A stretch of DNA of 64,000 bases from positions 124,001 to 188,000 of the IMG/VR virus record IMGVR_UViG_3300046616_000314; one strand, given 5' to 3'. Below, one piece after another: positions 1,090 through 15,761 of this stretch (within the stretch, counting starts at the first letter, position 1; every line of letters starts with the position of its first letter). Under the pieces are notes generated by a model that saw only the letters and a list, made by a program, of their open reading frames with translations, did no database searches and was not told the origin of the DNA. The translations under genes and the position numbers were made by a program.

Positions 1090-1416
1090 ATGAACAAGGT
1101 GGAACTTCATCTTCTCGAAAAAAGCCGCTATGTGGCGCGACCAGGGAAACTCCTAAAGGACTTCCCTGATTGTGCCATTGTGGTGTTGGAGTATCGCATA
1201 TCGTTCTATCAAAATTTCGATATCGAGTCTGTTCACAACGAGATTACTAATCTGGTGATTGGTAAACTTGAAGGTAAATGGTCTCGGCGTAATCCTCATG
1301 GTTGGCAAGAACAACGTGAAATGGGTTACAATATCAGACAAACGTTCCTTTTCGAACGCGAAGAGGACGCGATGATGTTCAAAATTCTAACGAGTGTGCT
1401 CCCCTATGTTCAATAA
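1090..1416 (+). CDS. FxxEEDA-FKLKW family small protein
   Basis: C-terminal FLFEREEDAMMFKIL. Confidence 0.75.
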   Translation: MNKVELHLLEKSRYVARPGKLLKDFPDCAIVVLEYRISFYQNFDIESVHNEITNLVIGKLEGKWSRRNPHGWQEQREMGYNIRQTFLFEREEDAMMFKILTSVLPYVQ

Positions 1417-1867
1417 GCTGGTTGACATCGCGAAAGACGCTTGGAAAACGTTTCGGGAAGACGAGACGATTGCTCGTGTCAACGTGCGTGTGCCTGAGAA
1501 AATGGTCAGCACGGATCAAGATGTTCTCCAACTTCTGGCGCAACTTCGCACCACATGGCGTGCAAATATGGCGACTGGGGCTATTTCTCCTAACACACCG
1601 ATGCCAGTTCCACCGATTCCCGGTATCCACCGGAAGTCTTTCAACATCCAAGCGGGAAGCCAGCAGTCCAATCGCTATGGGCGCCCTGGCAATGCCTATG
1701 ATTGGGCTGAACCAGAAATTCTCGAATGGTTGCAAAAGACCTATCGCTATCCTGTCGTGTTGACCCGCTATTTCGACTACGGGACTCAGCAGCAAGAATA
1801 TCGCGTGACGTTCAAAACGGACGAACATGCGTCGCTGTTCATCCTGCGCTGGGTTGGCAATAAATGA
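1394..1867 (+). CDS. FxxEEDA-FKLKW family protein
   Basis: VTFKTDEHASLFILRW; true start may be slightly downstream. Confidence 0.7.
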   Translation: MCSPMFNKLVDIAKDAWKTFREDETIARVNVRVPEKMVSTDQDVLQLLAQLRTTWRANMATGAISPNTPMPVPPIPGIHRKSFNIQAGSQQSNRYGRPGNAYDWAEPEILEWLQKTYRYPVVLTRYFDYGTQQQEYRVTFKTDEHASLFILRWVGNK

Positions 1868-2109
1868 GCCATGAAATGCTCATAAAACACGCTCTGTTCG
1901 GTAAGGTGTGGTACCCGGTGATCTCTATGGAAGAGGACGTGGGCATACAACCGTCTATCAGCTTTCAAAATTGGGCGAAAAAACATATCGCGGGTTTCGA
2001 ATTGAAAATGATTAAGTGGACCGGTCCCGAACTGTCTTGGATCACTATCAAATTTGAAAACGAAGAAGATGCTTGCCTCTTCAAATTGAAATGGTGCAAC
2101 AATGCATGA
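1864..2109 (+). CDS. FxxEEDA-FKLKW family small protein
   Basis: IKFENEEDACLFKLKW. Confidence 0.75.
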   Translation: MSHEMLIKHALFGKVWYPVISMEEDVGIQPSISFQNWAKKHIAGFELKMIKWTGPELSWITIKFENEEDACLFKLKWCNNA

Positions 2110-2362
2110 GTTTGATTTGAAAGACTGTCATTGGGTTTGGCTACCGATTTCGGTACCGGGGGCTTCTCGTAAAATTGAGTGGCACGCCGACGTGCTTCCC
2201 TGGCTTAAAGCCAATCTGTCAGCCATACCGGATATTGATATGCGGATGTACGACAGGACCCTACCACCGAAGGCTGGTCAATTGAATTTCTGGCAAAAGG
2301 TTGCTTTCTTCGCTACTGAAGAAGACATGGTTGCATTCAAATTGAAGTATGGTGGCGCATGA
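2102..2362 (+). CDS. FxxEEDA-FKLKW family small protein
   Basis: FFATEEDMVAFKLKY. Confidence 0.75.
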   Translation: MHEFDLKDCHWVWLPISVPGASRKIEWHADVLPWLKANLSAIPDIDMRMYDRTLPPKAGQLNFWQKVAFFATEEDMVAFKLKYGGA

Positions 2363-2676
2363 ACCAATTGAGAGTTGTGCTGGAACGGTCGGACCAATTT
2401 CGTGTGTACGAATTCCGCGTAAAGAAAGGCATGTGGATCGGCAACGAAACCGATAGCCCCATTGTTTTCACCGCCGAAGCTGAAGAGTGGCTGACCGCGA
2501 ACAAAATCCGCGTCAAGAGTCTGGATTTGGAACTGGTTCCGCATCCCGAATTCCTGCGTCAAAAAGCCGCTGGTGAACTGGCTCCCGATTACACGGGTTC
2601 TGGTTTGTGGCGCCAAGCTGTCGTTCGTTTCTATTCCAAGAACGATGCAGCGATGTTCCGGCTGAAGTACGCATGA
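2359..2676 (+). CDS. FxxEEDA-FKLKW family small protein
   Basis: RFYSKNDAAMFRLKY. Confidence 0.75.
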   Translation: MNQLRVVLERSDQFRVYEFRVKKGMWIGNETDSPIVFTAEAEEWLTANKIRVKSLDLELVPHPEFLRQKAAGELAPDYTGSGLWRQAVVRFYSKNDAAMFRLKYA

Positions 2677-2891
2677 CATATGTCGCCACGTTTTTCATCG
2701 TAAACACGGATTATCGTGTAATACGTGCGAAAATGGGCGTGCCAGATTTCATGTCTTTCAGTGAAAAAATAAAAGAAGAATTCCCGTCTGCCTCTACTAC
2801 AAAATGGGTTTATCGTCATACGGCAGAATCGGGATTTCATGTGAGCATGTCTGAAGAAGACGGCATCATGTTTAGACTGAAGTATCTATGA
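2673..2891 (+). CDS. FxxEEDA-FKLKW family small protein
   Basis: MSEEDGIMFRLKY; ATGA overlap start. Confidence 0.7.
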   Translation: MTYVATFFIVNTDYRVIRAKMGVPDFMSFSEKIKEEFPSASTTKWVYRHTAESGFHVSMSEEDGIMFRLKYL

Positions 2892-3247
2892 CCGAACCGG
2901 ACTCAATCAATTCATCGTACTACAAATGGTATTACGTTTTTGCAGAACAACCCATGGGCATGACCGATCATTTTCTTAGAGCGACCCACAAGTTCAAGCA
3001 CGTGTGGACAGATCGCATTCTCCAAGGTCCAGCGGGCGCATATATTGAGCGTGGTTTCAACGATGAGATTCTTGCGTGGATGGAAGCAACGGGATTCGAA
3101 TGCTGGTTCGAAGAACGCATGAGATCGAACGATGAACTTCTCTATTATTCAGATGGTTCGCCCGTTCTGGTTCCGCGATTGGTTATCGTATTCCATTCGG
3201 ACGAAGATGCCGTATTGTTCAAAGTGAAGTGGATGATTGCGAAATGA
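2888..3247 (+). CDS. FxxEEDA-FKLKW family small protein
   Basis: VFHSDEDAVLFKVKW. Confidence 0.75.
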   Translation: MTEPDSINSSYYKWYYVFAEQPMGMTDHFLRATHKFKHVWTDRILQGPAGAYIERGFNDEILAWMEATGFECWFEERMRSNDELLYYSDGSPVLVPRLVIVFHSDEDAVLFKVKWMIAK

Positions 3248-3537
3248 GTGACGATTATATTGCGATCACCGATCACCGAACCGGAAACCTTATCGTTGGA
3301 TACGAGGCAACGTGTCAGTTTCAACGGGACAATCGGTTCCATGGAAACGTGACGTTTAAACCAGACATCAAAGAATGGATCGAAATGACCGGTTGCAAAT
3401 GCAAGATCGAGAAACAGTCGATCTCGCTTTTGAAACTCCAATATTCGGATGGCTCGCTGGTTAAGTCGAATCGTTGGGTGATTGCTTTCGGGTCAGCCGA
3501 AGATCGACTTCTTTTCAAGATTAAATGGAAAGTATGA
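3244..3537 (+). CDS. FxxEEDA-FKLKW family small protein
   Basis: AFGSAEDRLLFKIKW; shares YSDGS with previous ORF. Confidence 0.75.
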   Translation: MSDDYIAITDHRTGNLIVGYEATCQFQRDNRFHGNVTFKPDIKEWIEMTGCKCKIEKQSISLLKLQYSDGSLVKSNRWVIAFGSAEDRLLFKIKWKV

Positions 3538-3773
3538 GCAACTTCACCGACATCGATTTAAACGGTGCTCATTTTTTACGTGGCGGCTATAACGGTCGTG
3601 TGTTCGTAGAACATATGACAAATGGTTCCGTGTACTTCATGTACGATGTTGAAGATTGGTTGAAAAAGCAAGAAATCCATGCTACGATTTTCAATTCTCC
3701 AAGCGGTAGAATAGTGACAGTTAGGTTTTCCAACGACAGCGACGCGGCTCTGTTCAGATTGAAATGGCTATGA
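3534..3773 (+). CDS. FxxEEDA-FKLKW family small protein
   Basis: RFSNDSDAALFRLKWL. Confidence 0.75.
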   Translation: MSNFTDIDLNGAHFLRGGYNGRVFVEHMTNGSVYFMYDVEDWLKKQEIHATIFNSPSGRIVTVRFSNDSDAALFRLKWL

Positions 3774-4066
3774 GTATTACGATCTCACCTTCGACACGCA
3801 ACAAGCTGTTCTATCGGCTGTACTCGTCATCGTACGCCGAAGGGTTCTTGAGTTTCGACCGGGACCACACTGGATTGGTCACGGTCCTGAACCCAGATAT
3901 CGCCGAATGGTGTGAGGCGAACCTTGCGGCTGTTCCTCTGCCCTTCCACGATGGTCATCAAATGCTGTCGGATGGACCCGCTGCAAACTATCTGATCTTC
4001 AAGAACGAGGACGATATGTCTTTGTTTCATATGAAGTTTTCAGAGCGCAATACACCAAGACGATGA
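3770..4066 (+). CDS. FxxEEDA-FKLKW family small protein
   Basis: IFKNEDDMSLFHMKF. Confidence 0.75.
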   Translation: MSITISPSTRNKLFYRLYSSSYAEGFLSFDRDHTGLVTVLNPDIAEWCEANLAAVPLPFHDGHQMLSDGPAANYLIFKNEDDMSLFHMKFSERNTPRR

Positions 4067-4344
4067 ATTTGCTTTTTTGGCAGCGCAAATTTTCCGTTGG
4101 AATCAATTACGATTTCATGCTGGCGTACCTGTATCGCAGCGTGGGAAATCTGAACGATAAATTTTATCCCAAGCAAGAATTAGACACATGGTGGAAAAAG
4201 AATATTCCGTATTCTTTCAAAGCTACGATGTTAGGTTCGTGGGCTCGTCAGGCTTTGGGCGCCACAGATAGCAATATCGATGTTGTGGAAATTCTTTTTA
4301 AAACCGAAGCTGACGCATTAATGTTTCGGTTGAAATGGCTATGA
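4063..4344 (+). CDS. FxxEEDA-FKLKW family small protein
   Basis: LFKTEADALMFRLKWL. Confidence 0.75.
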   Translation: MNLLFWQRKFSVGINYDFMLAYLYRSVGNLNDKFYPKQELDTWWKKNIPYSFKATMLGSWARQALGATDSNIDVVEILFKTEADALMFRLKWL

Positions 4345-4604
4345 TTATTCCTTGGTGTTTTAAGCGTTATAAGCATTCGGTCAAAGTCGGTTATGATTTC
4401 GTATTGAAGAACCTGCGGCGGCGCCCGTTAGGCTATGGTGGCGGCTTTGTCCCTCAGTATGATCTAGAAATGTGGTGGTTCAAAAATATGCCATATCATT
4501 TCAGAGCAAAAATACTTGGCTCATGGGATGAAGCAATTACGACTGTAGAAATTCTATTCAAATCCGAAGAACACGCAATGCTGTTTAGGTTGAAATGGCT
4601 ATGA
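4341..4604 (+). CDS. FxxEEDA-FKLKW family small protein (close paralog of 4063-4344)
   Basis: LFKSEEHAMLFRLKWL. Confidence 0.75.
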   Translation: MIIPWCFKRYKHSVKVGYDFVLKNLRRRPLGYGGGFVPQYDLEMWWFKNMPYHFRAKILGSWDEAITTVEILFKSEEHAMLFRLKWL

Positions 4605-4942
4605 TTTTCGATCTCAAGGCACGGCGCAAGTATCCACATAGTTTCGTGGCGTATGATCATACGCTATCGGATCGATATTTTCTGTTGATTCATGACATCC
4701 GCGAGTATGTCAAGTCTCGGACTGACAATGCTTTTGTTGTTGATTCGCTACCTATGTACTTGCGACACTTTCCCAAAGCCATGCAACTACAGATGTTACA
4801 AACATGGGAAAAACAACGCGAGTCGTGGCAGCATAAGCACCCGATCAACACCACAAAATTTCAACTGAAAACCTATAACCGTTTCGTCGCTGCATTTGAG
4901 ACAGCCGATGATCTAGTCATGTTCAAACTCAAATGGCTCTAA
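4601..4942 (+). CDS. FxxEEDA-FKLKW family small protein
   Basis: AFETADDLVMFKLKWL. Confidence 0.75.
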   Translation: MIFDLKARRKYPHSFVAYDHTLSDRYFLLIHDIREYVKSRTDNAFVVDSLPMYLRHFPKAMQLQMLQTWEKQRESWQHKHPINTTKFQLKTYNRFVAAFETADDLVMFKLKWL

Positions 4943-5211
4943 GAGATTTCTTCTTCCCCTGGAAATATCCGCTCATCCTTTCCAACGACTTCATTGTGGA
5001 AAACGCGAGCGCGATGCGTGACGAAATTTGGTGGGCGCCAGAAATTCAGGAATGGCTTGACATTTCTATCCCTTCTGGTGTTAAATTGGTAAGGAAGAAA
5101 GAAAAGACGTTTATTGGTGGTTTGGGTCAGCGCATTACCAAACGTATCAACATCGTTTATTTCAAACGTGAAGAAGACCGTCTGATGTTCAAGTTGAAGT
5201 GGGCGAAATGA
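4933..5211 (+). CDS. FxxEEDA-FKLKW family small protein
   Basis: YFKREEDRLMFKLKW. Confidence 0.75.
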   Translation: MALRDFFFPWKYPLILSNDFIVENASAMRDEIWWAPEIQEWLDISIPSGVKLVRKKEKTFIGGLGQRITKRINIVYFKREEDRLMFKLKWAK

Positions 5212-5441
5212 AGATTTTTTGGAACATTATCCCGTATCGCCCCATGCTCGAAATGAAAGAGTCGTGGAAGGCAGACATGCGCGTCAAGCACGGGACGGCT
5301 GACGAGCTTCACGCAAAGTTGTCGGAATGGATCGAGTTTTCCATGCCGTATTCACCCCTCGCCAAAGAACATAAAGGCAAGGACTACCTTTGGTTCAAGA
5401 GTGATAAGCACGCGGCGGTCTTCAAACTTAAGTGGCTATAA
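5208..5441 (+). CDS. FxxEEDA-FKLKW family small protein
   Basis: WFKSDKHAAVFKLKWL. Confidence 0.75.
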   Translation: MKIFWNIIPYRPMLEMKESWKADMRVKHGTADELHAKLSEWIEFSMPYSPLAKEHKGKDYLWFKSDKHAAVFKLKWL

Positions 5442-5442
5442 T

Positions 5443-5763
5443 ATGATCAAATACTTACCTCGATTTTTTAAACTCAAGGTTCCTGCGAAATACATCAACA
5501 AGCGTTTTGCCAGAAACGTCCGTGATGCCCTGGAACAGACCTACGCGATTGCTTCGGGGCAAGCGAGCGTAGAAGACTACCTTCCCAATTGGGAAAACCG
5601 CGAGGTTGATTCGTGGTGTGAACGGCACTTCGGTTATATCCCCAAAATCAAGGCTACCGCTGTTCAATGGGAAACTCGTTTAGACGACGATTCGGGCGTC
5701 CGGTTCAGTACAAGTTTTCTAACTCCAACCCACGCTATGCTTTTCCGTTTAAGATGGCTATAG
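5443..5763 (+). CDS. FxxEEDA-FKLKW family small protein
   Basis: SFLTPTHAMLFRLRWL. Confidence 0.72.
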   Translation: MIKYLPRFFKLKVPAKYINKRFARNVRDALEQTYAIASGQASVEDYLPNWENREVDSWCERHFGYIPKIKATAVQWETRLDDDSGVRFSTSFLTPTHAMLFRLRWL

Positions 5764-5972
5764 CGTTCTGGCATCGGAGAACCAAGGTTTCGCCCAAATA
5801 CTTGATGGATTCAACCATGATGTTTTGGTGCCTGCATAATCTTGGTTACACCCCAGAACGGATGTACAAATCGGTTTTACTTGTTGGCGAAAAACTAGTA
5901 ACATCGGATTATCTGACGTTTAGAACGTCACGTGATCTATTTCTGTTTTCGGTGTGTGCGCTAGAAAAATGA
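5754..5972 (+). CDS. FxxEEDA-FKLKW family small protein (divergent)
   Basis: WC...GYxP and TFRTSRDLFLF. Confidence 0.62.
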   Translation: MAIAFWHRRTKVSPKYLMDSTMMFWCLHNLGYTPERMYKSVLLVGEKLVTSDYLTFRTSRDLFLFSVCALEK

Positions 5973-6253
5973 AACGCTTCCTACCCAAGTTCTACAGAGT
6001 AGACATTCCTCCGAAGATGGCTGGGGGTGCTTGGGTAGATTTGCCTTCGTCGCAACAACGATATTACTCAGTCTATTTCCATAACCCCGATATCCTCCAA
6101 TGGTGTGTTAGAGAACTGGGTTACGTTCCCGAACTGGTTCAACATGATCGCGGGCGGACGATTAGTGGTGGCTATACCCCTATCGTCTTCAATTATTATA
6201 TCAAGCTTGCCACCAAGCATGACGTTGTGATGTTCAAACTGAAATGGCTATAA
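5969..6253 (+). CDS. FxxEEDA-FKLKW family small protein
   Basis: WCVRELGYVP...ATKHDVVMFKLKWL. Confidence 0.75.
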   Translation: MKRFLPKFYRVDIPPKMAGGAWVDLPSSQQRYYSVYFHNPDILQWCVRELGYVPELVQHDRGRTISGGYTPIVFNYYIKLATKHDVVMFKLKWL

Positions 6254-6501
6254 TCCTCAGACCGATGGCTGACATGCCCGAAGATGGTACGGCAATTGCC
6301 GTCGTCTTCGATGATCTGATTCGCTTTGGTTCAGTCACAACGAATGCATCAGTGGTGAAATTCTTCGCGGATAACGCTTTCAATGAATGGTGTGACGCTA
6401 TGCTTTCGCGTCGTCCATATGTCCGCGACTCTCTGTATAGAGTTTGGTTTCAATTCGCCAATAGCGACGATGCCGCAATTTTCAAACTTACGTTCAAATA
6501 A
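6244..6501 (+). CDS. FxxEEDA-FKLKW family small protein
   Basis: QFANSDDAAIFKLTF. Confidence 0.75.
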   Translation: MAIILRPMADMPEDGTAIAVVFDDLIRFGSVTTNASVVKFFADNAFNEWCDAMLSRRPYVRDSLYRVWFQFANSDDAAIFKLTFK

Positions 6502-6860
6502 TGCCGAGTGCTCAATACATTAAGTGGCTGACGCCCGTTGAACCATTTGTTCATCGGGTTCCAGGGATCGTATCGTATCATCGGATGCTGTATCGGAAGA
6601 GTAATCCGCCGGTCGTGCCGCCCAAGTGCGCCAATACGTTTTATACGTATGCGGAAGACCGGCGGTTGGTGAATATTGCTCCGTTCATTGCTCCAAAGAT
6701 GGAAAGATGGTTGCAGGAGAAAACCGAAGGTAGATATTTCTTGGTCATGCGTAACAAGAACAACATTCTACCGGGTATCTATTTTGAAGATGAAAACGAT
6801 GCGGTCTATTTCGCATTGGCATGGAATACTAAGCAGAGACATCGACGTGAACACAGATAA
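6501..6860 (+). CDS. FxxEEDA-FKLKW family small protein
   Basis: YFEDENDAVYFALAW. Confidence 0.75.
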   Translation: MPSAQYIKWLTPVEPFVHRVPGIVSYHRMLYRKSNPPVVPPKCANTFYTYAEDRRLVNIAPFIAPKMERWLQEKTEGRYFLVMRNKNNILPGIYFEDENDAVYFALAWNTKQRHRREHR

Positions 6861-7140
6861 ATGGCGTTATGAATTCGATAAAGATAGGTGGTTCTCATCG
6901 CGTTATCACGGCAAGTATGAGAATTTCTCACTGATCGAAAAGCCACAAATCATGCAAGAAATAAAACTTAATGGTGGTGTTGTTTCAATCGATTGGGAGC
7001 GTATTGCCATATGGTGCCGGGATAAATTTGGCAAATTGCCACTGATCTTGACCCAAGGCGATTATCTAGGTATTGTGCTTCCAACGGACGAAGACGCCCT
7101 AATGTTTAGGCTCAAGTTCTCGGAATTGTTCAGTATATGA
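6847..7140 (+). CDS. FxxEEDA-FKLKW family small protein
   Basis: LPTDEDALMFRLKF; GTG start inferred. Confidence 0.68.
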   Translation: MNTDKWRYEFDKDRWFSSRYHGKYENFSLIEKPQIMQEIKLNGGVVSIDWERIAIWCRDKFGKLPLILTQGDYLGIVLPTDEDALMFRLKFSELFSI

Positions 7141-7493
7141 CTTCGAAAATCTTGGTTCACGTTAATAGACCAACACGAACCGCGATCCTTTCTAAGACTG
7201 ATAATTTCGCCTCTGAGGCGGATCGACCCGCCGTGCTTGATCCTGACTTCATTGACTGGTGTAAGACCACTCTACGGGGCTCCTGCGAAGCCGTGAAGGC
7301 ACGCATGGACCAATGCGGCGAGCTACCAGACGATTCTTTCACTAAGCGTCAGTTATGGTTCAATCAAGGCGCGCTGAATGCGAAGCCTCCGAATCCTCTG
7401 CATTGGTTTCATCGTCTGGTGCTGTATTTCGAATACGAAGAAGACGCCACCATGTTCCGTTTGAAGTGGAGCGTTCCCGAAAATGAGTTATAA
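7137..7493 (+). CDS. FxxEEDA-FKLKW family small protein
   Basis: YFEYEEDATMFRLKW. Confidence 0.75.
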   Translation: MTSKILVHVNRPTRTAILSKTDNFASEADRPAVLDPDFIDWCKTTLRGSCEAVKARMDQCGELPDDSFTKRQLWFNQGALNAKPPNPLHWFHRLVLYFEYEEDATMFRLKWSVPENEL

Positions 7494-7818
7494 CGTTCGT
7501 GGAATCGGCATAGTTACAGGCAGATCACTAACCGATAGGGATTGGAAGGGTGAGTGGAAGAACGTCGAAACTCTTCCGCCCTTTATTCTGTACCATTCGG
7601 GTCACTGGAAATATAGTTCCAAGATCGACTGGCAGGGTACTTTCATATGGTGTTCTGCGAACATCAAGAATTTCAGTGCCTTCGCCATCAGAACTGAATC
7701 ACTATCGGGTCCTAACGTTGGATGCCTGTCATTCGATACTGAAGAAGATCGCATGTTGTGCAGAATGAAATTTCCAGATTGGGATTTCATTCCGGCTGAT
7801 ATGGTGCTGCACACATGA
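7483..7818 (+). CDS. FxxEEDA-FKLKW family small protein
   Basis: SFDTEEDRMLCRMKF. Confidence 0.75.
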   Translation: MSYNVRGIGIVTGRSLTDRDWKGEWKNVETLPPFILYHSGHWKYSSKIDWQGTFIWCSANIKNFSAFAIRTESLSGPNVGCLSFDTEEDRMLCRMKFPDWDFIPADMVLHT

Positions 7819-8123
7819 GAATGCGTTACATCGTCCCAAGCGCGGCAGGAAACCGCCTAGTCTGGTATGGCGAATGGCTTAGGGTTTCTGCCGTTCCGCC
7901 GAATTCGCTCATTCTACCCACACAAAATGTGGCAGAGAGCGTTAATCTCGCACACTGGTTTGAATGCCAGAAATGGGCGAAGGAAAATTTTGGCTATTTC
8001 GAAACCTTCGGTCTCGATACAATAATAGTGCGCCAGTCGCCGCTTTGGGGCGCCCATTTCGAAACCGAAGATGACATGCTATTGTTCAAACTGAAATTCA
8101 ATCGATGGCAGATTTTCGAATGA
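7815..8123 (+). CDS. FxxEEDA-FKLKW family small protein
   Basis: HFETEDDMLLFKLKF. Confidence 0.75.
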   Translation: MRMRYIVPSAAGNRLVWYGEWLRVSAVPPNSLILPTQNVAESVNLAHWFECQKWAKENFGYFETFGLDTIIVRQSPLWGAHFETEDDMLLFKLKFNRWQIFE

Positions 8124-8452
8124 TTACCCGGCACGTTGCTCAACCAACGAAGAAACGTTGGCACAATACCGAACGGCAGTTCGTTCGCGTAAATGGGCAA
8201 GTGATCAAACACCTTTTACTAGATTGTGCCAGGAACCCGTATTTCTGGGTGCTAGTCGATATCATGCATTTTCAACCGTATGACGATACGTTTTGGTATG
8301 ACATGCTGCATTGGGGTAGCGAGAATTTTGAGAAGCAACCCGTGGTCCTGTTTCAGAATCATTATTCCGCTATTTTATTTTGCAGCGATGAAGACGCGCT
8401 GCTTTTTAAACTGAAATTCTCTGGGCGGTATACCGCGAGTATGAGCCAATGA
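8120..8452 (+). CDS. FxxEEDA-FKLKW family small protein
   Basis: LFCSDEDALLFKLKF. Confidence 0.75.
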   Translation: MITRHVAQPTKKRWHNTERQFVRVNGQVIKHLLLDCARNPYFWVLVDIMHFQPYDDTFWYDMLHWGSENFEKQPVVLFQNHYSAILFCSDEDALLFKLKFSGRYTASMSQ

Positions 8453-8778
8453 AAGGCGCAATCACATTATACTTTCGGGAGAGTCCCGAAGCGACGTGCT
8501 GGACCGTAAAGGATCGTGACAAATACGTCATGGTCAACGGTAAGACATTTCGCAATCTGGTAAAGGATTGCGTTAAGAATCCGTTTCCATATATCCTTAT
8601 CGATCATGACAAGCACATGGTTGATACGAATATTTGGAATGAAGTTCTGCCATGCACCAAATGGGAAAAATTTCCGACCATTTTGGCACAATGTCAGTTC
8701 ATCCTCGTGCTATTTCATAGCGAGGACGATGCCGTGATGTTCAAGATCATGTTCTCGAAATATTTTAAGGGAGAATAG
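8449..8778 (+). CDS. FxxEEDA-FKLKW family small protein (paralog of 8120-8452)
   Basis: LFHSEDDAVMFKIMF. Confidence 0.75.
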   Translation: MKGAITLYFRESPEATCWTVKDRDKYVMVNGKTFRNLVKDCVKNPFPYILIDHDKHMVDTNIWNEVLPCTKWEKFPTILAQCQFILVLFHSEDDAVMFKIMFSKYFKGE

Positions 8779-8780
8779 AA

Positions 8781-8944
8781 TGGTGCCGGTTGCAAGACTC
8801 GAACTCGCGACCTTCGGTTTTCCTTGATCCTCTAAGCTTTAGGCTCTCGGACCTTCAAAGGGGGAGAGACTTTCGTCTGCTCCCGCTTCAGTCAACTTAA
8901 TGACCTGTACAAAACCACTGCTCTACCAACTGAGCTAAACCGGC
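8781..8944 (-). tRNA. tRNA-Thr(UGU) with 88-nt insertion (putative intron) after position 37
   Basis: Reverse strand GCCGGTT-TA-GCTC-AGTTGGTA-GAGC-A-GTGGT-TT-TGT-A-[88 nt]-A-ACCGA-AGGTC-GCGAG-TTCGAGT-CTTGC-AACCGGC-ACCA; TATAAATA at 8963-8970 upstream. Confidence 0.88.
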
Positions 8945-8995: not shown

Positions 8996-9238
8996 TCAAT
9001 CGACTTCGTTGCGACAAATTTTCACGATAGCCATGATGACGATGGAAACACCGAGAGCCGATACCAGTGCAATGATCGGATGGGTACACAACAACCCAAC
9101 GAATGCCAGGGCTCCGAAGAGAATCAGACCCACTAGAGCAAGTCCTACAAATAAGACTGCACCGATTGTTACGCATTCGACAGTGGATAGACGAAGGGCT
9201 TTAACAACCCGCTTGATATTTTGTAAGTTCATATCCAT
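8996..9238 (-). CDS. small membrane protein
   Basis: Two long hydrophobic segments. Confidence 0.6.
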   Translation of the reverse strand: MDMNLQNIKRVVKALRLSTVECVTIGAVLFVGLALVGLILFGALAFVGLLCTHPIIALVSALGVSIVIMAIVKICRNEVD

Positions 9239-9528
9239 TTGAGTTTAAAAAGGATTAGGGTATCGTCGTCAATGAATTCTAGGGCTAGACGCCATTCACG
9301 TCTTCCGTCTATCCCAAAATCTATAGTATCTAATTTTGGCACATATTTCAAATTTTCTTTACACCAATCGACAAAATTATCCGACAGAACAATAGCATTT
9401 GAACTGGTATGTGTTTTACCAGGGAATATTTTTGTCACGTCAACCACAAAGATGTCGTTGAACGGTGATCGCTTCTGATGATTTTCCGGCATGAACACAA
9501 AAACGGGCATTAGGTAGCTTTCAGCCAA
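9229..9528 (-). CDS. FxxEEDA-FKLKW family small protein
   Basis: WCKENL...EFIDDDTLILFKLKWI. Confidence 0.72.
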   Translation of the reverse strand: MAESYLMPVFVFMPENHQKRSPFNDIFVVDVTKIFPGKTHTSSNAIVLSDNFVDWCKENLKYVPKLDTIDFGIDGRREWRLALEFIDDDTLILFKLKWI

Positions 9529-9833
9529 TCATCGATAAAATCGGTTGCAAGGAAGGTGTCGGCGCCAAATTGGGCGTAACGCATCTTGAACATCGTTGCG
9601 TCCAGATCGGTTTCGAAACGAAGATGGAACACTTGGTTGCCGCCATTGTCATACTCTACAGTCGTCGTGGGGTATTTGATGCCCCTGCGGTCCATCCACA
9701 GTAGTACGGAGGTAATAAGATGGTATTCGCGAAAATGCTGTTTGGCTACCTCATCATAGGTCCATCGCCAGTCCAGCAATTGCTCACTACCGTTTTCGTT
9801 AGTCTCGTGAACCCTTACAACGGTATCAGCCAT
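9510..9833 (-). CDS. FxxEEDA-FKLKW family small protein
   Basis: RFETDLDATMFKMRY. Confidence 0.72.
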   Translation of the reverse strand: MADTVVRVHETNENGSEQLLDWRWTYDEVAKQHFREYHLITSVLLWMDRRGIKYPTTTVEYDNGGNQVFHLRFETDLDATMFKMRYAQFGADTFLATDFIDDWLKAT

Positions 9834-10129
9834 CAGAATTTCAACCTACAAAGCAGCATGGATTCTGCGGAGTCTAATTCAAGTAGGAGCTTACGGCAAA
9901 GCCCTTTATTGAAAATAGGTCGCAAGATTGGTGTAATTTCGTTGGCTTCACACCAACAGGTAAATTCCTCCGTCAGCCGAAATACCTCGATAACATTCAA
10001 ATGTCTACTCAGTCGCCCGCTTTTGGTTATTTTGAAGCCAGCCAAATGTTGTTTCGTGGGATCAAGTTCCCACACCTTGCTTCCAAGTTCGGATACATCC
10101 AACTCGTATTTCACAGTTTGTTTGCCCAA
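9833..10129 (-). CDS. FxxEEDA-FKLKW family small protein
   Basis: WCEAN...ELDSAESMLLCRLKF. Confidence 0.68.
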   Translation of the reverse strand: MGKQTVKYELDVSELGSKVWELDPTKQHLAGFKITKSGRLSRHLNVIEVFRLTEEFTCWCEANEITPILRPIFNKGLCRKLLLELDSAESMLLCRLKF

Positions 10130-10383
10130 TAGAGTTTGAACAGGGCTGCGCTATCGGTGTTGTCGAACACGATGAGAGGTTTCCACGTATTAACTTCCGC
10201 GTAGACCTTATTACCATCTGCCACGTGTTGGAAGGAATACCCGTTGACGCCATGCTGTTCGCACCATTTGACGAACGCTTGGGTAGGAAGAATGACGCGA
10301 TCATGTACGCGAGCCGCCCAAATTTCCCATCTAGAATTGAGAGTAAGGGCGATCTCGTTCACAAACGTTTCTCCGAAAACCAA
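10111..10383 (-). CDS. FxxEEDA-FKLKW family small protein
   Basis: WCEQHG...VFDNTDSAALFKLYW. Confidence 0.72.
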   Translation of the reverse strand: MVFGETFVNEIALTLNSRWEIWAARVHDRVILPTQAFVKWCEQHGVNGYSFQHVADGNKVYAEVNTWKPLIVFDNTDSAALFKLYWANKL

Positions 10384-10742
10384 GAAGGATAGGCGTTTAT
10401 AACACGTTTTTGAACAAATGCCATAAAATTACTACTAGAATCTCTGGAATTTCTGAACTGGAACGCTTGATCCTGAAGCGTTACTAACAGAGTGGAGTAT
10501 TCGAGTGCGATATCTTCATAGCTCGTATGGAAATCGTAGTTCTGGGTCAATACGATGATGGCAGCAATTAGATCACTATCATCCACGTGTTCGAATTCGC
10601 GGGGATCATATTCAATTTCTTTAAGAACAGCGTTCGCCAGAGCTTTGAAAGCGTTGCGATCATGTGGCTCTAAACGTTCAGAAAAACTCTCCATATGAGA
10701 ATGGAGTACACTAAGATGTTTCATACCAATACTTATTAACAA
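10359..10742 (-). CDS. hypothetical protein
   Basis: ORF embedded in the minus-strand array, lacks the family motif. Confidence 0.55.
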   Translation of the reverse strand: MLISIGMKHLSVLHSHMESFSERLEPHDRNAFKALANAVLKEIEYDPREFEHVDDSDLIAAIIVLTQNYDFHTSYEDIALEYSTLLVTLQDQAFQFRNSRDSSSNFMAFVQKRVINAYPSWFSEKRL

Positions 10743-10948
10743 AACTTCAATTTAAAATATACAATATCGTCTGGGTTAGTAAGTGTGACTTCGTATAGAA
10801 AGCTAGCAAGTTTAGATTGTCTATAGAAAGTATAGCGTTCTCTGAGAAATGCTCGAATACTAGACAAGCATTCGATTTGATCATAGAACAGAAAACGCCC
10901 CGGATCGGAGGGGCTTTCCCAAGCGCGTTCAACATCAATCATAACCAC
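10736..10948 (-). CDS. FxxEEDA-FKLKW family small protein
   Basis: TLTNPDDIVYFKLKF. Confidence 0.68.
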   Translation of the reverse strand: MVMIDVERAWESPSDPGRFLFYDQIECLSSIRAFLRERYTFYRQSKLASFLYEVTLTNPDDIVYFKLKFC

Positions 10949-11238
10949 TTCAACTTAAACAGCATGGCTTCTTCATCAGTCTCAAACCACATGGAAATGT
11001 GGTCGGGAAACATATCGTTTTGTGTGCGGCGGTTCATAGCAGTTTCGAGAAACGTCCGCCCGATTTCTCCATCACGTTTACGCTCGTTGAGCCATTCGTG
11101 AATTACGTCATCAATCATCGGATACCACAGACCATCGCGCCAGACGAACAGGAAGGCGGTTGTACACCCCGGTCCACCGTATGCGGCATGGTGGTGTTGT
11201 GGAATTTTCAGTTCATACACGTGAAATATACTCAGCAA
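10939..11238 (-). CDS. FxxEEDA-FKLKW family small protein
   Basis: WFETDEEAMLFKLKWL. Confidence 0.72.
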   Translation of the reverse strand: MLSIFHVYELKIPQHHHAAYGGPGCTTAFLFVWRDGLWYPMIDDVIHEWLNERKRDGEIGRTFLETAMNRRTQNDMFPDHISMWFETDEEAMLFKLKWL

Positions 11239-11491
11239 ATTTCAAACGGAATATGACTGCATCGTTATCCGAGACGAAACATGCGGCTGATCGAAACCGA
11301 TACGCGGCGGTAGACATGCTGCGTTCCATCGGTGATTCGTAAATAAAATCATAGCGATAATCTACGACTGCCAAATCTTCGGTTTGGGTTGCGCACCATG
11401 CTTCCATCGTCTGCCGGGCTTCGAAAGACAGAACCTTGTTTAGGATGATAGGCGTAAACCGTTTCCGATCTTTGTGCGCGTTTGGGTCCAT
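11213..11491 (-). CDS. FxxEEDA-FKLKW family small protein
   Basis: CFVSDNDAVIFRLKF. Confidence 0.72.
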   Translation of the reverse strand: MDPNAHKDRKRFTPIILNKVLSFEARQTMEAWCATQTEDLAVVDYRYDFIYESPMERSMSTAAYRFRSAACFVSDNDAVIFRLKFAEYISRV

Positions 11492-11569
11492 ATCTCACCA
11501 TACCTTAACGAAATTGAAATTGCAAATTTTCGTAGGGTTCGCTATGGTAAATCATTGATTGGAATTGAT

Positions 11570-12060: not shown

Positions 12061-12276
12061 ATGTTACATCGTATCCGACTAGGCTATGAAAAAACGTACG
12101 AATTGTCGGAATATGGCGCGCGGGGCGTGTTTAGGTATCTAACTCCCCACGTGGAAGAATGGTGTGAAGAAAACGAAGTCGATCTTCATAGCATCGAAGA
12201 CAATGACGATGACACCTACACCTTTAATTTTGTAGATAAAGACAGCGCGGCATTGTTTCGGTTCAAGTGGCTCTGA
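12061..12276 (+). CDS. FxxEEDA-FKLKW family small protein
   Basis: EEWCEEN...NFVDKDSAALFRFKWL. Confidence 0.75.
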   Translation: MLHRIRLGYEKTYELSEYGARGVFRYLTPHVEEWCEENEVDLHSIEDNDDDTYTFNFVDKDSAALFRFKWL

Positions 12277-12542
12277 TGTATGATTTAGACGTTGCTTATG
12301 ATTATGTTTTGCCGTTGGCGAGTTATGATGTTCATGCAAAAACTCGAATCATCAAGCCGCCTGTTGGCGATTGGTGCAAAGAGAATGGCATAGGCACACC
12401 TACTCTTTCTCATATCAAGGCGAACGTCAAACCGAACATGGAAGGTTCGTTTTATACGTTCACGTTTCAATCAGAAGATGATGCCGCCTTGTTCAAGTTG
12501 AAATGGCTGGCTAAAAATTTGAAGATTGACTTCGGACGATAA
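12276..12542 (+). CDS. FxxEEDA-FKLKW family small protein
   Basis: DWCKENG...TFQSEDDAALFKLKWL. Confidence 0.75.
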   Translation: MYDLDVAYDYVLPLASYDVHAKTRIIKPPVGDWCKENGIGTPTLSHIKANVKPNMEGSFYTFTFQSEDDAALFKLKWLAKNLKIDFGR

Positions 12543-12573: not shown

Positions 12574-12759
12574 ATGCCTAGACTGACCAGTGCCGAGTAT
12601 CTTCGCGCCTACAAAGAAGGTCAGCAAGCTTTCGCCAACATGCTTCAGTGCAGCGATAACCCATACACCGCTCTCATGGATGACCAATTTTTCGGCTGGG
12701 AAAATGGTTGGGTTGACGATCAGCAAGCCGCCTGGGATAAACTGATAGAATCGTTTTAG
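12574..12759 (+). CDS. ribosome modulation factor (Rmf)-like small protein
   Basis: RAYKEGQQA...NPY...WENGW matches the Rmf-fold pattern; GGAG RBS. Confidence 0.5.
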   Translation: MPRLTSAEYLRAYKEGQQAFANMLQCSDNPYTALMDDQFFGWENGWVDDQQAAWDKLIESF

Positions 12760-13349
12760 TACAGACGAGATTTCTTTTTCGTATCTTTGTCTAAACGAAG
12801 TTTGGCGATCACTGCATCTTGTATTTGCTTGGCAGGCTTCCCGTCCACATAGAGTAATGGATGGTCAAAGATCGGAGAATATTGGTGTGGTCCATCAAAT
12901 TCTTCAGGATGATCAATATGATAGATGACGTGTTTCATCATTCTCTCATATTGGGTCATAACCATTTCTAAGCGAATGATATATCGACTCACGTTGTTGA
13001 TGGGTCCGATTACAAACTCTTCCGCTTCGGTATATTCGCCCTCGCGCGTGTATGGCGTAGGCTCGTAAAAACTCTTCTTCTCATCGGTGTCCCAGTAATC
13101 GACGGGCGAGATTTTGTAGTTGTGTGACAGGCGCCGTTGGTCCAGCACGAACACTACGGCTCCGAAACCATGGGCGATACGCGGGCTCCGCGACAGGCTT
13201 ACGCCATTAATGTCGTCCAAGTCCATGTTGGAATGGCTGGTTCGATCCGCCATTTTATTCTGTTTGAGAATGAGCAAAGCACCACCGAACGTCGTCCCAT
13301 GATACAGGGGCGCGTCTCGTCCTTCACATAGAATCTCATGAATAAACAT
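12756..13349 (-). CDS. ADP-ribosyltransferase-like protein, candidate capsid-packaged protein
   Basis: LYHGT...GVSLSRS...EAEEFV motif series; N-terminal MFIHEILCE leader; directly downstream of the neck gene. Confidence 0.55.
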   Translation of the reverse strand: MFIHEILCEGRDAPLYHGTTFGGALLILKQNKMADRTSHSNMDLDDINGVSLSRSPRIAHGFGAVVFVLDQRRLSHNYKISPVDYWDTDEKKSFYEPTPYTREGEYTEAEEFVIGPINNVSRYIIRLEMVMTQYERMMKHVIYHIDHPEEFDGPHQYSPIFDHPLLYVDGKPAKQIQDAVIAKLRLDKDTKKKSRLY

Positions 13350-14117
13350 TTAGCCGATTACGAAGCCATAGCCCATGTCGGAATCGATCAACTGAATGAT
13401 CTCTTGTTCCAGACGTTCCAGTTCGGATTGTGCTTCCGATTTTAGAGCGTCAGCGTTCATGGTGATACCACCTTGAGGACCGGCGAGGCTTTGGAACTTG
13501 CCACGGGCTTCAGCGATCATCAGCTTGCATTGCGCCAAGGCATAGTCACGAATCCACGGGCGAGCATATACGTCGTTGATGATGACTTCTTCAGGACGGG
13601 CGTTGTAGACGTGGACCATGATTTGCTCAACGTATGTAATCTTGCGTTGGATCGTCAGGCTCTTGGAATAGGTATCCCAAGTGTAAAGGATGTCGCGACC
13701 GAACATGCGACCAACAAGCTCTTGATATTGCATAGCAAAGTCGTAAGTGGCTAGCATACCTGCACCGCCGGTATCCATGCCACCTGGGTTGGAAATCATG
13801 TAGATGTTGTTGGTGAAAGCAAGGCTGAAGGGATCGATGGACGCGCCGCCAGCGGTGCCGCCGATGTTACGACGATACAGGGCGACGATGTTTTGAATTT
13901 CCTTCGGGAGAGTGTACTTGTTAACATCTGGTTGAGCATCGAAGAAGACGAAGCTCTCTTCAACGCTGTTACCCGAACGCTGACGATAGCGATCTAGGGC
14001 AAAGGTGATGGCAAGATTATACTCTTTATCTTCCAATTCAAGGTCAATCATGCCGCCGCCCAAACGGGTTTGAATTTCGTCAATCAATTGCGAGCGCGCA
14101 GTTACGTTATTAGCCAT
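13350..14117 (-). CDS. neck protein, T4 gp13-like
   Basis: LGGGMIDLEL, WIRDYALAQCK...KF...GGITMNAD, C-terminal FVIG pattern of gp13-like proteins; GATAAATA upstream. Confidence 0.8.
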   Translation of the reverse strand: MANNVTARSQLIDEIQTRLGGGMIDLELEDKEYNLAITFALDRYRQRSGNSVEESFVFFDAQPDVNKYTLPKEIQNIVALYRRNIGGTAGGASIDPFSLAFTNNIYMISNPGGMDTGGAGMLATYDFAMQYQELVGRMFGRDILYTWDTYSKSLTIQRKITYVEQIMVHVYNARPEEVIINDVYARPWIRDYALAQCKLMIAEARGKFQSLAGPQGGITMNADALKSEAQSELERLEQEIIQLIDSDMGYGFVIG

Positions 14118-14184
14118 GATAAATCCTCACCTTGTAAGGTATTTATCGGTTGACTTTCGTTTGGTAATTAACGAAAATACAAGC

Positions 14185-14382
14185 ATGAAACACGATTTCT
14201 CTGGCTTTCTCGGACGGGCATCGATGCCCGCTGGTTCTCGTTGCGCTTTGCGTCTGAGTAATCGACGTTTGAAGCCCGAAAACCTAAATCTGACTCGTGA
14301 TCAGATGCGTACCTATGCGAAACTTCACGGCTTACCGTACAATGGTCACGTATCTTCGCATAGGTACGGTCAGTGGCGTTGA
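14185..14382 (+). CDS. hypothetical protein
   Basis: ORF after TTGACT promoter-like sequence. Confidence 0.4.
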   Translation: MKHDFSGFLGRASMPAGSRCALRLSNRRLKPENLNLTRDQMRTYAKLHGLPYNGHVSSHRYGQWR

Positions 14383-14431
14383 CATAATTTTCGTAATACC
14401 GTAATAGTCCAGCTTCAGTCGGGAGTATTAC

Positions 14432-14641
14432 GTGTATCAAAAGTCTCAAGAAGAAATCGAACGTGGTTGTCTGAAGTCAAGTAAGATTTTTCCAATTGCG
14501 AATGAAGTGAAGGCAAGATATCTGGCGGGCGAGTCCATGACCAGTATCGGAAATAGCTATCGGCACTTGGGGGTTACGAGTGCCGCTGTCTCTGGTTTCA
14601 TCACCAAGAACAAGATCAAGCGACTAGCCCAAGCTGCATAA
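14432..14641 (+). CDS. small helix-turn-helix protein
   Basis: RYLAGESMTSIG...GVTSAAVSGFI HTH pattern; TTGACA upstream. Confidence 0.5.
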   Translation: MYQKSQEEIERGCLKSSKIFPIANEVKARYLAGESMTSIGNSYRHLGVTSAAVSGFITKNKIKRLAQAA

Positions 14642-14669
14642 GACAGATGATCTAGCCATAAATAAACTT

Positions 14670-15761
14670 ATGGCTAGATTTTCTATTTGGAACAGCGGCA
14701 ACGGACGACGCACAAAAGATTTTAGATTCATTGATCGCACGATTTCTGAATTCTTCAACGTGTCGGGTACTGCCCTCTTTATTCACCTTTATGAAGGTGT
14801 GTACGACCAAGAGGCTCAAGATGGGTCCATCATGGATGGCGGGATCACCGCTATTGAAGACCCGGTTCTAGGTGAAAATCGCGACCGCAAGTATCGCGAT
14901 GAAATCATTGAAATGCGTGGCACATATAATGTCGCGGATAACGACTTTGATATGAAGCAATTCGGTTTGTTTCTATCGAGCGATACGATCTTTATCGAAG
15001 TCCACATGAATGACATGCTCGCAATGTGCGGACGCAAGATCATCCCTGGCGACGTGATTGAACTGCCTCACCAGCGCGACGACGCGATGTTGGATGGTGG
15101 TCCAGCTATCAACAAATATTACGTGGTGGAAGATTCCAACCGGGCTTCGGACGGTTATTCCTCGACATGGTATCCGCACATTTGGCGCCTGAAGATGGTT
15201 CCGATGACGGCTACCCAAGAATTCCAAGACATTCTGGATCAACCTGCGACCGATCCATGGGGCATCAACGATGTCGCCAACGGTGTTACTATTGGTGATA
15301 TCGCTACAGGTAGTGATGGCAATGATCTCATAGACATCAACCAAGACATCTATGATATTGCGGTTGCCAACTTCCGCAATCGTAACTTCGAAACTCAACA
15401 ATTCTGGGTCAAGCCTGGGGACGAAATCACGAGTCAGAACCCATGGATTTTGGCAGGTAACGGTATTCCCCCGAATGGCTATGCTCTATTAGGTACGGGT
15501 GCCACATTCCCGATTAATCCTGACGTGGGCGACTACTATTTGCGCTCAGATTACAATCCGCCGACTTTGTTCCGTAGAACCGAGCATGGATGGAAGATGC
15601 AGGAAATCAATTGGCGTCACCAAGACTGGACGCCAGCGAGCCGCCTGTATCATGATTTCCTCAATAACAATAGGGATGCCACGTTCGACAACGACGGTGG
15701 AACAGAGAAAGAAAAGCAAGCTCTGTCGAAAGTTGTTCGCCCGCGCGCAGATTTCGAATGA
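14670..15761 (+). CDS. neck/head-closure protein, T4 gp14-like
   Basis: ENRDRKY, DMKQFGLFL..DTIFI, GRKIIPGDVIELP; CATAAATA 5 nt before ATG. Confidence 0.72.
   Translation: MARFSIWNSGNGRRTKDFRFIDRTISEFFNVSGTALFIHLYEGVYDQEAQDGSIMDGGITAIEDPVLGENRDRKYRDEIIEMRGTYNVADNDFDMKQFGLFLSSDTIFIEVHMNDMLAMCGRKIIPGDVIELPHQRDDAMLDGGPAINKYYVVEDSNRASDGYSSTWYPHIWRLKMVPMTATQEFQDILDQPATDPWGINDVANGVTIGDIATGSDGNDLIDINQDIYDIAVANFRNRNFETQQFWVKPGDEITSQNPWILAGNGIPPNGYALLGTGATFPINPDVGDYYLRSDYNPPTLFRRTEHGWKMQEINWRHQDWTPASRLYHDFLNNNRDATFDNDGGTEKEKQALSKVVRPRADFE

What the first reader, a model, noticed from the sequence alone, without database searches (positions are those of the whole stretch)
3755..6253. The conserved motif doubles as the start signal of the next gene (self-coupling cassette junction)
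Seen: the K/R-W-L codons recur as near-identical DNA. TTGAAATGGCTATGA ends the genes at 3773, 4344 and 4604, with variants CAAATGGCTCTAA (4942), AGATGGCTATAG (5763) and GAAATGGCTATAA (6253); on the minus strand AAATGGATATGA (9229) and AAGTGGTTATGA (10939). At 4933, 5754 and 6244 the next gene's ATG is formed by the last A of the K/R codon plus TG of the Trp codon; elsewhere ATGA overlaps are used. Inference: each unit's 3' end supplies both microhomology for recombination and translational coupling, so units could be inserted, duplicated or shuffled without their own RBS.
Basis: partly seen in the sequence, partly recalled or inferred. Interest (0 to 1): 0.6.

Follow-up and report, generated by a model that had tools for sequence, protein, structure and literature searches.

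The report
Overlapping stop-start junctions, expanded phage family
The recurring DNA word is the end of a small protein copied about 246 times in a 561-kb phage; its last codon and stop codon are tuned to spell the next gene's ATG, which is an ordinary way of chaining genes, and I found no sign that it acts as a recombination signal.

Summary
The window is part of a 561,116-bp virus record. An iterated HMM finds 246 paralogs of one small (about 90 aa) uncharacterised protein, 13% of the genome, in arrays of up to 50 genes. The motif F-K-L-K-W-L is the end of the predicted C-terminal helix. Synonymous bias is very strong only at the last sense codon (CTA 62% against 11.7% baseline) and the stop (TGA 65% against 34%). 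Both biases belong to the 108 junctions that spell ATGA. The Lys codon that makes the K-W ATG is at baseline usage. So that ATG, 7 nt before the stop, is a by-product. It is still the only available start at about 10 junctions, including 4933. ATGA starts after family genes have no Shine-Dalgarno-like pairing, which fits translational coupling. The recombination idea has no support: there are no recent duplicates, the 15-mer count is close to expectation (11 against 7.4), and the K-W ATG is not conserved in related phages. Overall this is an ordinary mechanism in an unusually large new family.

The parts
1090..8778 (+). Co-directional array of 24 HMM-supported family genes plus at least 2 degenerate ones (2607-2891 and 5754-5972). 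It contains the finding.
3525..3773 (+). Family gene ending LKWL-stop. The 15-mer lies at 3759-3773. The start is 3525 or the ATGA start at 3534.
3764..4066 (+). Family gene with a C-terminal tail after the motif. Its two in-frame starts are 3764 (K-W ATG) and 3770 (ATGA). Its own stop forms ATGA with the start at 4063.
4063..4344 (+). Family gene. The 15-mer lies at 4330-4344.
4335..4604 (+). Family gene and nearest paralog of 4063-4344 (47% identity). Starts at 4335 or 4341. The 15-mer lies at 4590-4604.
4595..4942 (+). Family gene. Starts at 4595 or 4601.
4933..5211 (+). Family gene whose only usable start is the K-W ATG at 4933, which gives a 10-nt overlap.
5208..5441 (+). Family gene starting at an ATGA overlap. 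It ends AAGTGGCTATAA. The next start, 5443, lies 4 nt after the first base of the stop.
5443..5763 (+). Family gene ending RWL-stop (AGATGGCTATAG).
5754..5972 (+). Degenerate family member, not reached by the HMM. The start is ambiguous: 5754 (R-W ATG), 5805 or 5817.
5969..6253 (+). Family gene starting at an ATGA overlap and ending AAATGGCTATAA. Its product is identical to P0002 from an independent assembly.
6244..6501 (+). Family gene. The start is ambiguous: 6244 (K-W ATG), 6265 or 6274. Its stop overlaps the next start by 1 nt (TAATG).
9229..11494 (-). Minus-strand run of family genes, with the junctions AAATGGATATGA at 9229-9240 and AAGTGGTTATGA at 10939-10950. The first of these feeds a non-family membrane-protein gene at 8996-9238.
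12061..12542 (+). Two more family genes. The junction AAGTGGCTCTGATG at 12265-12278 is a 1-nt overlap.

Best explanation
The repeated DNA is the 3' end of a massively expanded family of small alpha/beta proteins in a 561-kb phage related to the Phosso and Atu_ph07 jumbo phages. It is not a dedicated DNA element. Three things make it recur. (1) Protein-level conservation of a C-terminal helix, ..ED.A..F-K-L-K-W-L, that ends one residue after the Trp. (2) The small codon choice for Lys and Trp. (3) Selection on the third base of the last sense codon and on the stop codon, so that together they spell ATGA, or TGATG/TAATG. This places the next gene's ATG on the previous gene's stop. The arrays are therefore most likely long polycistrons. 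In them a ribosome that terminates on one unit restarts on the next without a Shine-Dalgarno sequence, because the protein motif occupies the place where one would sit. The coupling step is inferred. The ATG formed by Lys/Arg plus Trp, 7 nt before the stop, is in frame with the ATGA start. It is an unselected by-product of K-W. It acts as the start, or as a back-up start, only where the ATGA has been lost, at about 4% of junctions including 4933. The family grew by old tandem duplications.
For: The family and its size: 246 HMM members, 73.4 kb, 13.1% of the genome, arrays of 50, 24 and 21 genes. The motif is protein-level. It closes helix 71-81 of the AlphaFold model. It is kept where a tail follows it and in relatives that read FKLRW, FKLTW or FKMFW. 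Codon bias is confined to the overlap: terminal Leu is CTA in 43 of 69 cases against an 11.7% baseline (p 3e-23), and internal Leu is CTA in 2 of 69. TGA is 65% in the family against 34% elsewhere, but only 38% once the ATGA junctions are removed. Members that lack Trp, and so have no ATG 7 nt before the stop, still end GGATGA, CTATGA and so on. The Lys AAA frequency is at baseline. ATGA occurs at 44% of family stops against 10% of others. The downstream gene is in the ATGA frame at 131 of 172 junctions. The ATGA starts are Shine-Dalgarno-free. The array shows no excess of sigma-70-like promoters or terminators. The exact 15-mer occurs 11 times among the 43 members ending LKWL, against 7.4 expected from independent site frequencies. 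The related 415-kb phage G001 shows ATGA at 16 of 67 members without a conserved K-W ATG. ATGA/TGATG overlaps and termination-reinitiation are established in bacteria (PMC6728339).
Against: No expression, ribosome or N-terminal data exist, so coupling is inferred. According to PMC6728339, most bacterial overlapping pairs carry a Shine-Dalgarno motif, and removing it usually lowers reinitiation in E. coli, so a chain without one is atypical. Three synonymous patterns are left unexplained. The internal Leu is TTG in 51% of cases against 25.5% (p 8e-8). All 12 Lys-Trp junctions with a 1-nt overlap use AAG (Fisher p 8e-6). CTA remains at 27.5% outside the ATGA class (p 0.005). Neighbouring genes share motif codons slightly more often than random pairs (0.61 against 0.50, p 0.006; not significant within junction class). 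The non-family gene set is a crude greedy ORF set.
Confidence: 0.72

Rival explanations
1. One reading: the junction word is a selected dual-purpose DNA cassette end. Its microhomology drives insertion, duplication and shuffling of units, and it also supplies the start signal.
For: Units abut exactly at the word, and the arrays are tandem. The best paralog is the immediate neighbour for 49 of 244 members, and lies within 3 genes for 70, against about 7 expected. Neighbours share motif codons a little more often than random pairs. The ATGA starts lack a Shine-Dalgarno sequence of their own.
Against: There are no recent duplicates. Paralog DNA matches are 50-120 nt at 72-85%, and best protein identity has a median of 36%. 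Bias at the stop and last codon disappears outside ATGA junctions. The 15-mer count is close to the independent-site expectation. Relatives keep the protein motif with other codons and other residues. Any whole-gene duplicate that survives would begin and end at gene borders, whatever the mechanism.
Confidence: 0.1
2. The K-W ATG, 7 nt before the stop, is the real start at every AAATGG junction. The overlaps are then 10 nt and the products begin Met-Ala-Met. The ATGA is secondary.
For: It is in frame and upstream of the ATGA ATG at 37 of the 53 Lys-Trp ATGA junctions. It is the only start at about 10 junctions. The gene calls on an independent assembly use it at 4595 and 4933.
Against: AAA at that Lys is not enriched over baseline, and is equally common where no ATG can form. 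The ATGA ATG is under very strong selection, including in Phe/Tyr variants that have no upstream ATG. The position is Arg, Thr, Ala or Phe in relatives.
Confidence: 0.12
3. The overlaps only reflect genome compaction. Each unit is initiated de novo on an unstructured, Shine-Dalgarno-independent start, with no dependence on translation of the upstream unit.
For: Shine-Dalgarno use is weak throughout this genome: only 30-48% of starts pair at -4 kcal/mol or better, and the purine enrichment upstream of starts is modest.
Against: ATGA is three times more frequent among close family junctions than among close non-family junctions in the same genome (54% against 27%, p 3e-9). The family ATGA starts are the class with the least Shine-Dalgarno pairing. 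Overlapping pairs tested experimentally in bacteria were nearly all coupled (PMC6728339).
Confidence: 0.18

Closest known systems
Overlapping stop-start gene pairs (ATGA, TGATG) coupled by termination-reinitiation (PMC6728339, PMC10666635)
   Same: Co-directional genes with 4-nt or 1-nt overlaps, where the downstream start sits on the upstream stop. This is the dominant junction type in the family.
   Different: Here the pairs form chains of up to 50 paralogous units. The Shine-Dalgarno motif usual for such pairs is absent, because a conserved protein motif fills that position. A second in-frame ATG lies 6 nt upstream at many junctions.
PeSL promoter-terminator cassettes that mediate modular shuffling in T4-type phages (PMC2839356, PMC4122927)
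   Same: A short repeated sequence at the borders of small variable genes in a T4-related large phage.
   Different: PeSLs are intergenic regulatory repeats, and their role was shown by indels between near-identical phages. Here there is no intergenic DNA, no promoter or terminator signal, only 12-15 nt of coding identity, and no indel evidence.
Lineage-specific expansions in jumbo phages, for example about 35 zinc-ribbon copies in Bacillus phage G, called unprecedented in PMC7824862
   Same: One small domain multiplied within one large phage genome.
   Different: There are about 246 copies here, 13% of the genome, of a family with no Pfam or PHROG model.
Uncharacterised 'hypothetical protein' genes of Sinorhizobium phage Phosso (PV764938.1) and metagenomic relatives
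   Same: Same family by profile search: 27 matches in Phosso, 67 in the 415-kb G001 record, and 1,181 representatives at E 0.001 or better in the large library, about half of the top 150 from this genome itself. All end shortly after the Trp.
   Different: The consensus elsewhere is FKL-R/T/A-W, so the K-W ATG is mostly absent. The Phosso loci examined show few ATGA overlaps and mix family members with other genes. In G001 ATGA still occurs at 16 of 67 members.

Membership tests
ATGA/TGATG overlapping, translationally coupled gene pairs | Co-directional neighbours whose stop and start codons overlap by 4 nt or 1 nt | tested here: met
   108 ATGA and 34 TGATG/TAATG junctions among 246 family genes. 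The downstream gene is in that frame at 131 of 172 family-to-family junctions.
ATGA/TGATG overlapping, translationally coupled gene pairs | Shine-Dalgarno motif in the 3' end of the upstream gene (typical, not obligatory) | tested here: not met
   Family ATGA starts have a mean duplex energy of -2.07 kcal/mol against -2.02 at random positions, and 13% against 17% reach -4 or better.
ATGA/TGATG overlapping, translationally coupled gene pairs | Downstream translation depends on upstream translation | not testable with these tools
   This needs reporter constructs or ribosome profiling.
PeSL-type mobile regulatory cassettes | Repeated intergenic unit with a terminator stem-loop and an early promoter | tested here: not met
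   The genes overlap, so there is no spacer. Promoter-like sites: 21 found against 24 expected. Terminator-like sites: 15 against 15.
PeSL-type mobile regulatory cassettes | Indels between close relatives bounded by the repeat | not testable with these tools
   The closest distinct relatives share only 54-73% identity in the neck protein. The 80,975-bp Logan contig is the same phage.
Tandem lineage-specific expansion of one protein family | Many paralogs recognised by one profile, clustered in arrays, with nearest paralogs close together | tested here: met
   246 members in 65 runs, the largest with 50 genes. The best paralog lies within 3 genes for 70 of 244 members against about 7 expected.
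Any curated protein family (Pfam, PHROGs) or solved fold | Significant profile or structural match | tested here: not met
   Pfam gives 0 families for 82 members. PHROGs give nothing below E 0.03. Foldseek against the PDB gives a best E of 0.24. VIA-align gives a best Z of 4.4. The PDB profile search gives a best E of 0.006, to a 27-residue stretch of RanBD.

The most novel reading that the evidence does not exclude
Every unit of this family carries, inside its own conserved C-terminal codons, the complete start signal for whatever follows it: two in-frame ATGs and no Shine-Dalgarno sequence. Chains of up to 50 genes would then be read by serial termination-reinitiation. This self-contained junction would be what allowed the unit to be copied some 246 times, the largest paralog expansion I could find reported for a phage.
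Probability: 0.15. Interest if true: 0.7.

Novelty: new variant of a known kind. Interest (0 to 1): 0.45.

Why it matters
The junction mechanism itself is textbook. The setting is not. One uncharacterised 90-residue domain fills 13% of a 561-kb phage genome, and its conserved C-terminus is locked together with the next gene's start codon. This gives a natural test bed for how far Shine-Dalgarno-free termination-reinitiation can carry along a polycistron. It also shows how a protein constraint and an overlapping start codon together can mimic a conserved DNA element. For annotation, it shows that start calls in these arrays (ATGA against the ATG 6 nt upstream) are systematically ambiguous. The function of the family is the larger open question. 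My guess, which is inference only, is a diversified binder or host-takeover repertoire.

Tried and rejected
2. Near-identical relatives for breakpoint mapping: IMG/VR and JGI scans with the neck protein gave at most 73% identity.
3. Selection for the K-W ATG: rejected, because AAA usage equals the baseline.
4. Duplication of a two-gene block, 5443-5972 onto 5969-6501: the first genes are paralogs (E 7e-8), but the second genes show no pairwise similarity. Not supported.
5. Function from fold or sequence: Foldseek against the PDB, VIA-align wide, the PDB profile search, Pfam, PHROGs and the ESM Atlas gave only generic alpha/beta-sandwich resemblances.
6. Cultured-phage hits with a single member by tblastn: none. 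The profile search was needed.
7. Another genetic code: not invoked. All three stop codons end units at the same motif position.
8. My first placement of the tRNA-like match at 5909-5945 was a coordinate error, because those were query coordinates. The correct site is 8908-8944.
Full report
**Where the window lies.** The window is bases 124,001-188,000 of a 561,116-bp IMG/VR virus record. The record is estimated 97% complete and has 48% GC. Its first 187 bases repeat at its end. The window encodes a T4 gp13-like neck protein at 13350-14117. The closest cultured relatives of that protein, at 46% identity, are Sinorhizobium phage Phosso (469 kb) and Agrobacterium phage Atu_ph07 (490 kb). Uncultured huge phages of 415 and 457 kb share 54-67% identity.

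**The observation.**
- TTGAAATGGCTATGA occurs three times in the window, each time ending a gene, against 0.01 expected.
- The looser pattern gives 11 matches against 1.8 expected. Ten are gene ends and one is an out-of-frame chance hit.
- The ATGs at 4933, 5754 and 6244 are built from the last A of Lys/Arg plus the TG of Trp.
- The same kind of ATG also exists at 3764, 4335 and 4595, six bases upstream of, and in frame with, the ATGA starts.

**What the thing is.** The genes are members of one paralogous family.
- A profile built from ORFs with the C-terminal motif and iterated once finds 246 members in the genome. They total 73.4 kb, 13.1% of the genome.
- They form 65 runs, including arrays of 50, 24 (the window's plus-strand array, 1090-8778) and 21 genes. 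37 members lie in the window.
- 145 of the 246 end exactly one residue after the aromatic residue. That last residue is Leu in 86 and Gly in 20.
- No Pfam or PHROG family matches.
- An AlphaFold model made with 82 paralogs has mean pLDDT 73.6, and 81-92 over the C-terminal half. It is a small alpha/beta domain in which ED.A..FKLKW forms the last helix.
- Structure searches give only generic alpha/beta-sandwich resemblances: Foldseek E 0.24 or worse, and VIA-align Z 4.4 or less.
- The family is widespread but unnamed. It has 1,181 representatives at E 0.001 or better in the large library. Of the top 150, 73 come from elsewhere, mostly ending FKLRW plus one residue. There are 27 matches in Phosso, all annotated as hypothetical proteins, and 67 in the 415-kb relative G001.

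**Junction anatomy.**
- At 172 family-to-family junctions the downstream gene is in the frame of the ATGA ATG in 131 cases, in the second other frame in 36, and in the upstream gene's frame in 5.
- I classed each stop by the nearest ATG that opens at least 50 codons. The 246 family genes give ATGA 108, TGATG/TAATG 34, an ATG 3-15 nt downstream 32, only the ATG 7 nt upstream 10, another upstream ATG 13, and none nearby 46.
- The 752 other ORFs of a greedy gene set give 77, 51, 83, 4, 46 and 468 for the same classes.
- ATGA is therefore 44% against 10% (p 2e-28). Among close junctions it is 54% against 27% (p 3e-9).

The baseline is codon usage in family gene bodies.
- Terminal Leu is CTA in 43 of 69 cases against 11.7% (p 3e-23). 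The Leu two codons earlier is CTA in only 2 of 69.
- The stop is TGA in 160 of 246 against 253 of 752 for other ORFs. Once the 108 ATGA junctions are set aside, TGA is 52 of 138, or 38%, which is baseline.
- The Lys before Trp is AAA in 61 of 101 cases. AAA is 55% in family bodies, 40 of 59 before internal Trp, 24 of 35 where Phe or Tyr replaces Trp so that no ATG can form, and 15 of 24 where the motif is followed by a tail.
- The excess conservation is therefore real, but it is the footprint of the overlapping ATG of the next gene. The K-W ATG shows no selection of its own.
- The exact 15-mer is found 11 times among the 43 members ending LKWL. Independent site frequencies predict 7.4, and baseline codon usage predicts 0.26. 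There is no extra linkage that would point to a DNA element.

**Where the K-W ATG does matter.** At 10 family junctions it is the only ATG available.
- At 4933 the next in-frame start is a GTG 56 nt past the stop, while homology to the paralogs at 4063 and 4335 begins at residue 7.
- At genome position 376,527 (minus strand) the next start is 140 nt away, and the family domain begins at residue 21.
- Five of the ten keep the otherwise rare CTA or TTA before a TAA or TAG stop. This fits decayed ATGA junctions rescued by the upstream ATG, though that reading is an inference.
- 5754 and 6244 are ambiguous. Later ATGs exist, and the gene calls on an independent assembly of the same phage chose 5817 and 6265. 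Those same calls chose 4595 and 4933 (mapped using the 100% identity).

**Ribosome binding sites.** Pairing of the 18 bases upstream of each start to a generic anti-Shine-Dalgarno sequence averages as follows:

| Class of start | Mean pairing (kcal/mol) |
|---|---|
| Family ATGA starts | -2.07 |
| Random positions | -2.02 (p 0.57 against family ATGA) |
| ATGA starts after non-family genes | -3.21 |
| Family 1-nt overlaps | -3.27 |
| Starts 3-15 nt downstream of the stop | about -3.5 |

The protein motif occupies the place where a Shine-Dalgarno sequence would be. The array has no excess of sigma-70-like promoters or terminators. With the established behaviour of ATGA/TGATG pairs (PMC6728339), the most likely mechanism is serial termination-reinitiation along long polycistrons. 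This step is inferred, not shown. That paper also reports that such pairs usually do carry a Shine-Dalgarno motif, so these chains are atypical in that respect.

**Recombination.**
- A self-comparison of the genome finds no recent duplicates. Matches between paralogs are 50-120 nt long at 72-85% identity, mostly at the 3' ends.
- The best paralog has a median identity of 36%, and at most about 47% over a full length.
- The best paralog is the immediate neighbour for 49 of 244 members, and within three genes for 70, against about 7 expected. Growth was therefore by tandem duplication, but long ago.
- Neighbours share motif codons slightly more often than random pairs (0.61 against 0.50, p 0.006). 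The effect is not significant within a junction class (p 0.14) and is expected from shared ancestry.
- In relatives the residue before Trp is Arg, Thr, Ala or Phe. In the Phosso loci I examined ATGA is infrequent, and in G001 it is 16 of 67. The K-W ATG is thus a feature of this lineage, not of the family.
- The direct test, indel breakpoints, could not be run.

**Unexplained residue.**
- The internal Leu is TTG in 51% of terminal motifs against 25.5% in the same Leu-Lys context (p 8e-8), and in 37% where a tail follows.
- All 12 Lys-Trp junctions with a 1-nt overlap use AAG (p 8e-6 against the ATGA class). AAGTGG then lies 5 nt before the ATG and pairs somewhat better with the anti-Shine-Dalgarno sequence. 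That is a possible reason but is untested.

**Verdict.** It is wrong about the importance of the K-W ATG. Its recombination idea is unsupported. The mechanism is a known kind in an unusual setting. The more notable fact is the size of the family: PMC7824862 called about 35 copies of a zinc ribbon in phage G unprecedented.

Noticed in passing
window 8781-8944 (-): An interrupted tRNA gene in the gap between the plus-strand array and the minus-strand genes. Its 5' half (8944-8908) is 97% identical to the start of tRNA-Thr(UGU) of Rhizobium phage RHph_X2_28B. An insertion of about 87 nt then follows anticodon-loop position 37, and after it comes a normal 3' half ending in CCA. Default ARAGORN and Rfam (E up to 1) miss it. 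ARAGORN in intron mode calls it with an 86-nt intron. The whole folds as a cloverleaf with a three-hairpin insert (z -3.8). Intron mode finds two more candidates in the genome, at 194,503-194,610 and 509,247-509,420. The insert is too short for a group I intron.
   Followed up: partly
whole genome G000; arrays at 1-6 kb, 118-136 kb, 355-386 kb, 402 kb and 547-550 kb: The family has about 246 members and fills 13% of the genome, with one uninterrupted run of 50 genes at 371,754-386,429 (-). This is several times larger than the largest phage expansion I found in the literature (about 35 copies, PMC7824862).
   Followed up: yes
G000:C1:1-187 and 560,930-561,116: The two ends of the record repeat each other at 99.5% identity. 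This points to a circular or circularly permuted complete assembly, although the record is labelled linear.
   Followed up: no
window 8996-9238 (-): An 80-aa predicted membrane protein that is not a family member. It is chained to the family gene 9229-9528 through the same AAATGGATATGA junction, so the junction also serves unrelated genes.
   Followed up: no
genome-wide junctions, e.g. window 12265-12278: Every Lys-Trp junction with a 1-nt overlap (TGATG or TAATG) uses AAG, never AAA (12 of 12). ATGA junctions use AAA in 70% of cases. The internal Leu of the motif also prefers TTG about twofold over baseline. Neither pattern is explained.
   Followed up: partly
protein P0007 (876 aa, from the large library): The top hit of the profile search is a long protein with about 10 repeats that match only the family's middle helix (the ..DWC..HGG.LP.. 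region). It resembles helicase-associated-domain repeats. This may be chance similarity or a distant link for that sub-motif.
   Followed up: no
family profile positions 51-77: A weak sequence match (E 0.006) to the last strand and C-terminal helix of the Ran-binding domains of RanBP2/Nup358, which carry a similar ..F...E.A..FK.KF.. segment. The predicted folds differ, so this is probably convergence.
   Followed up: no
window 12756-16291 and the Logan contig: An 80,975-bp contig assembled from run SRR26076614 carries the same genes in the same order, with one product 100% identical. The phage was therefore assembled independently at least twice, and the array is not an assembly artefact.
   Followed up: partly
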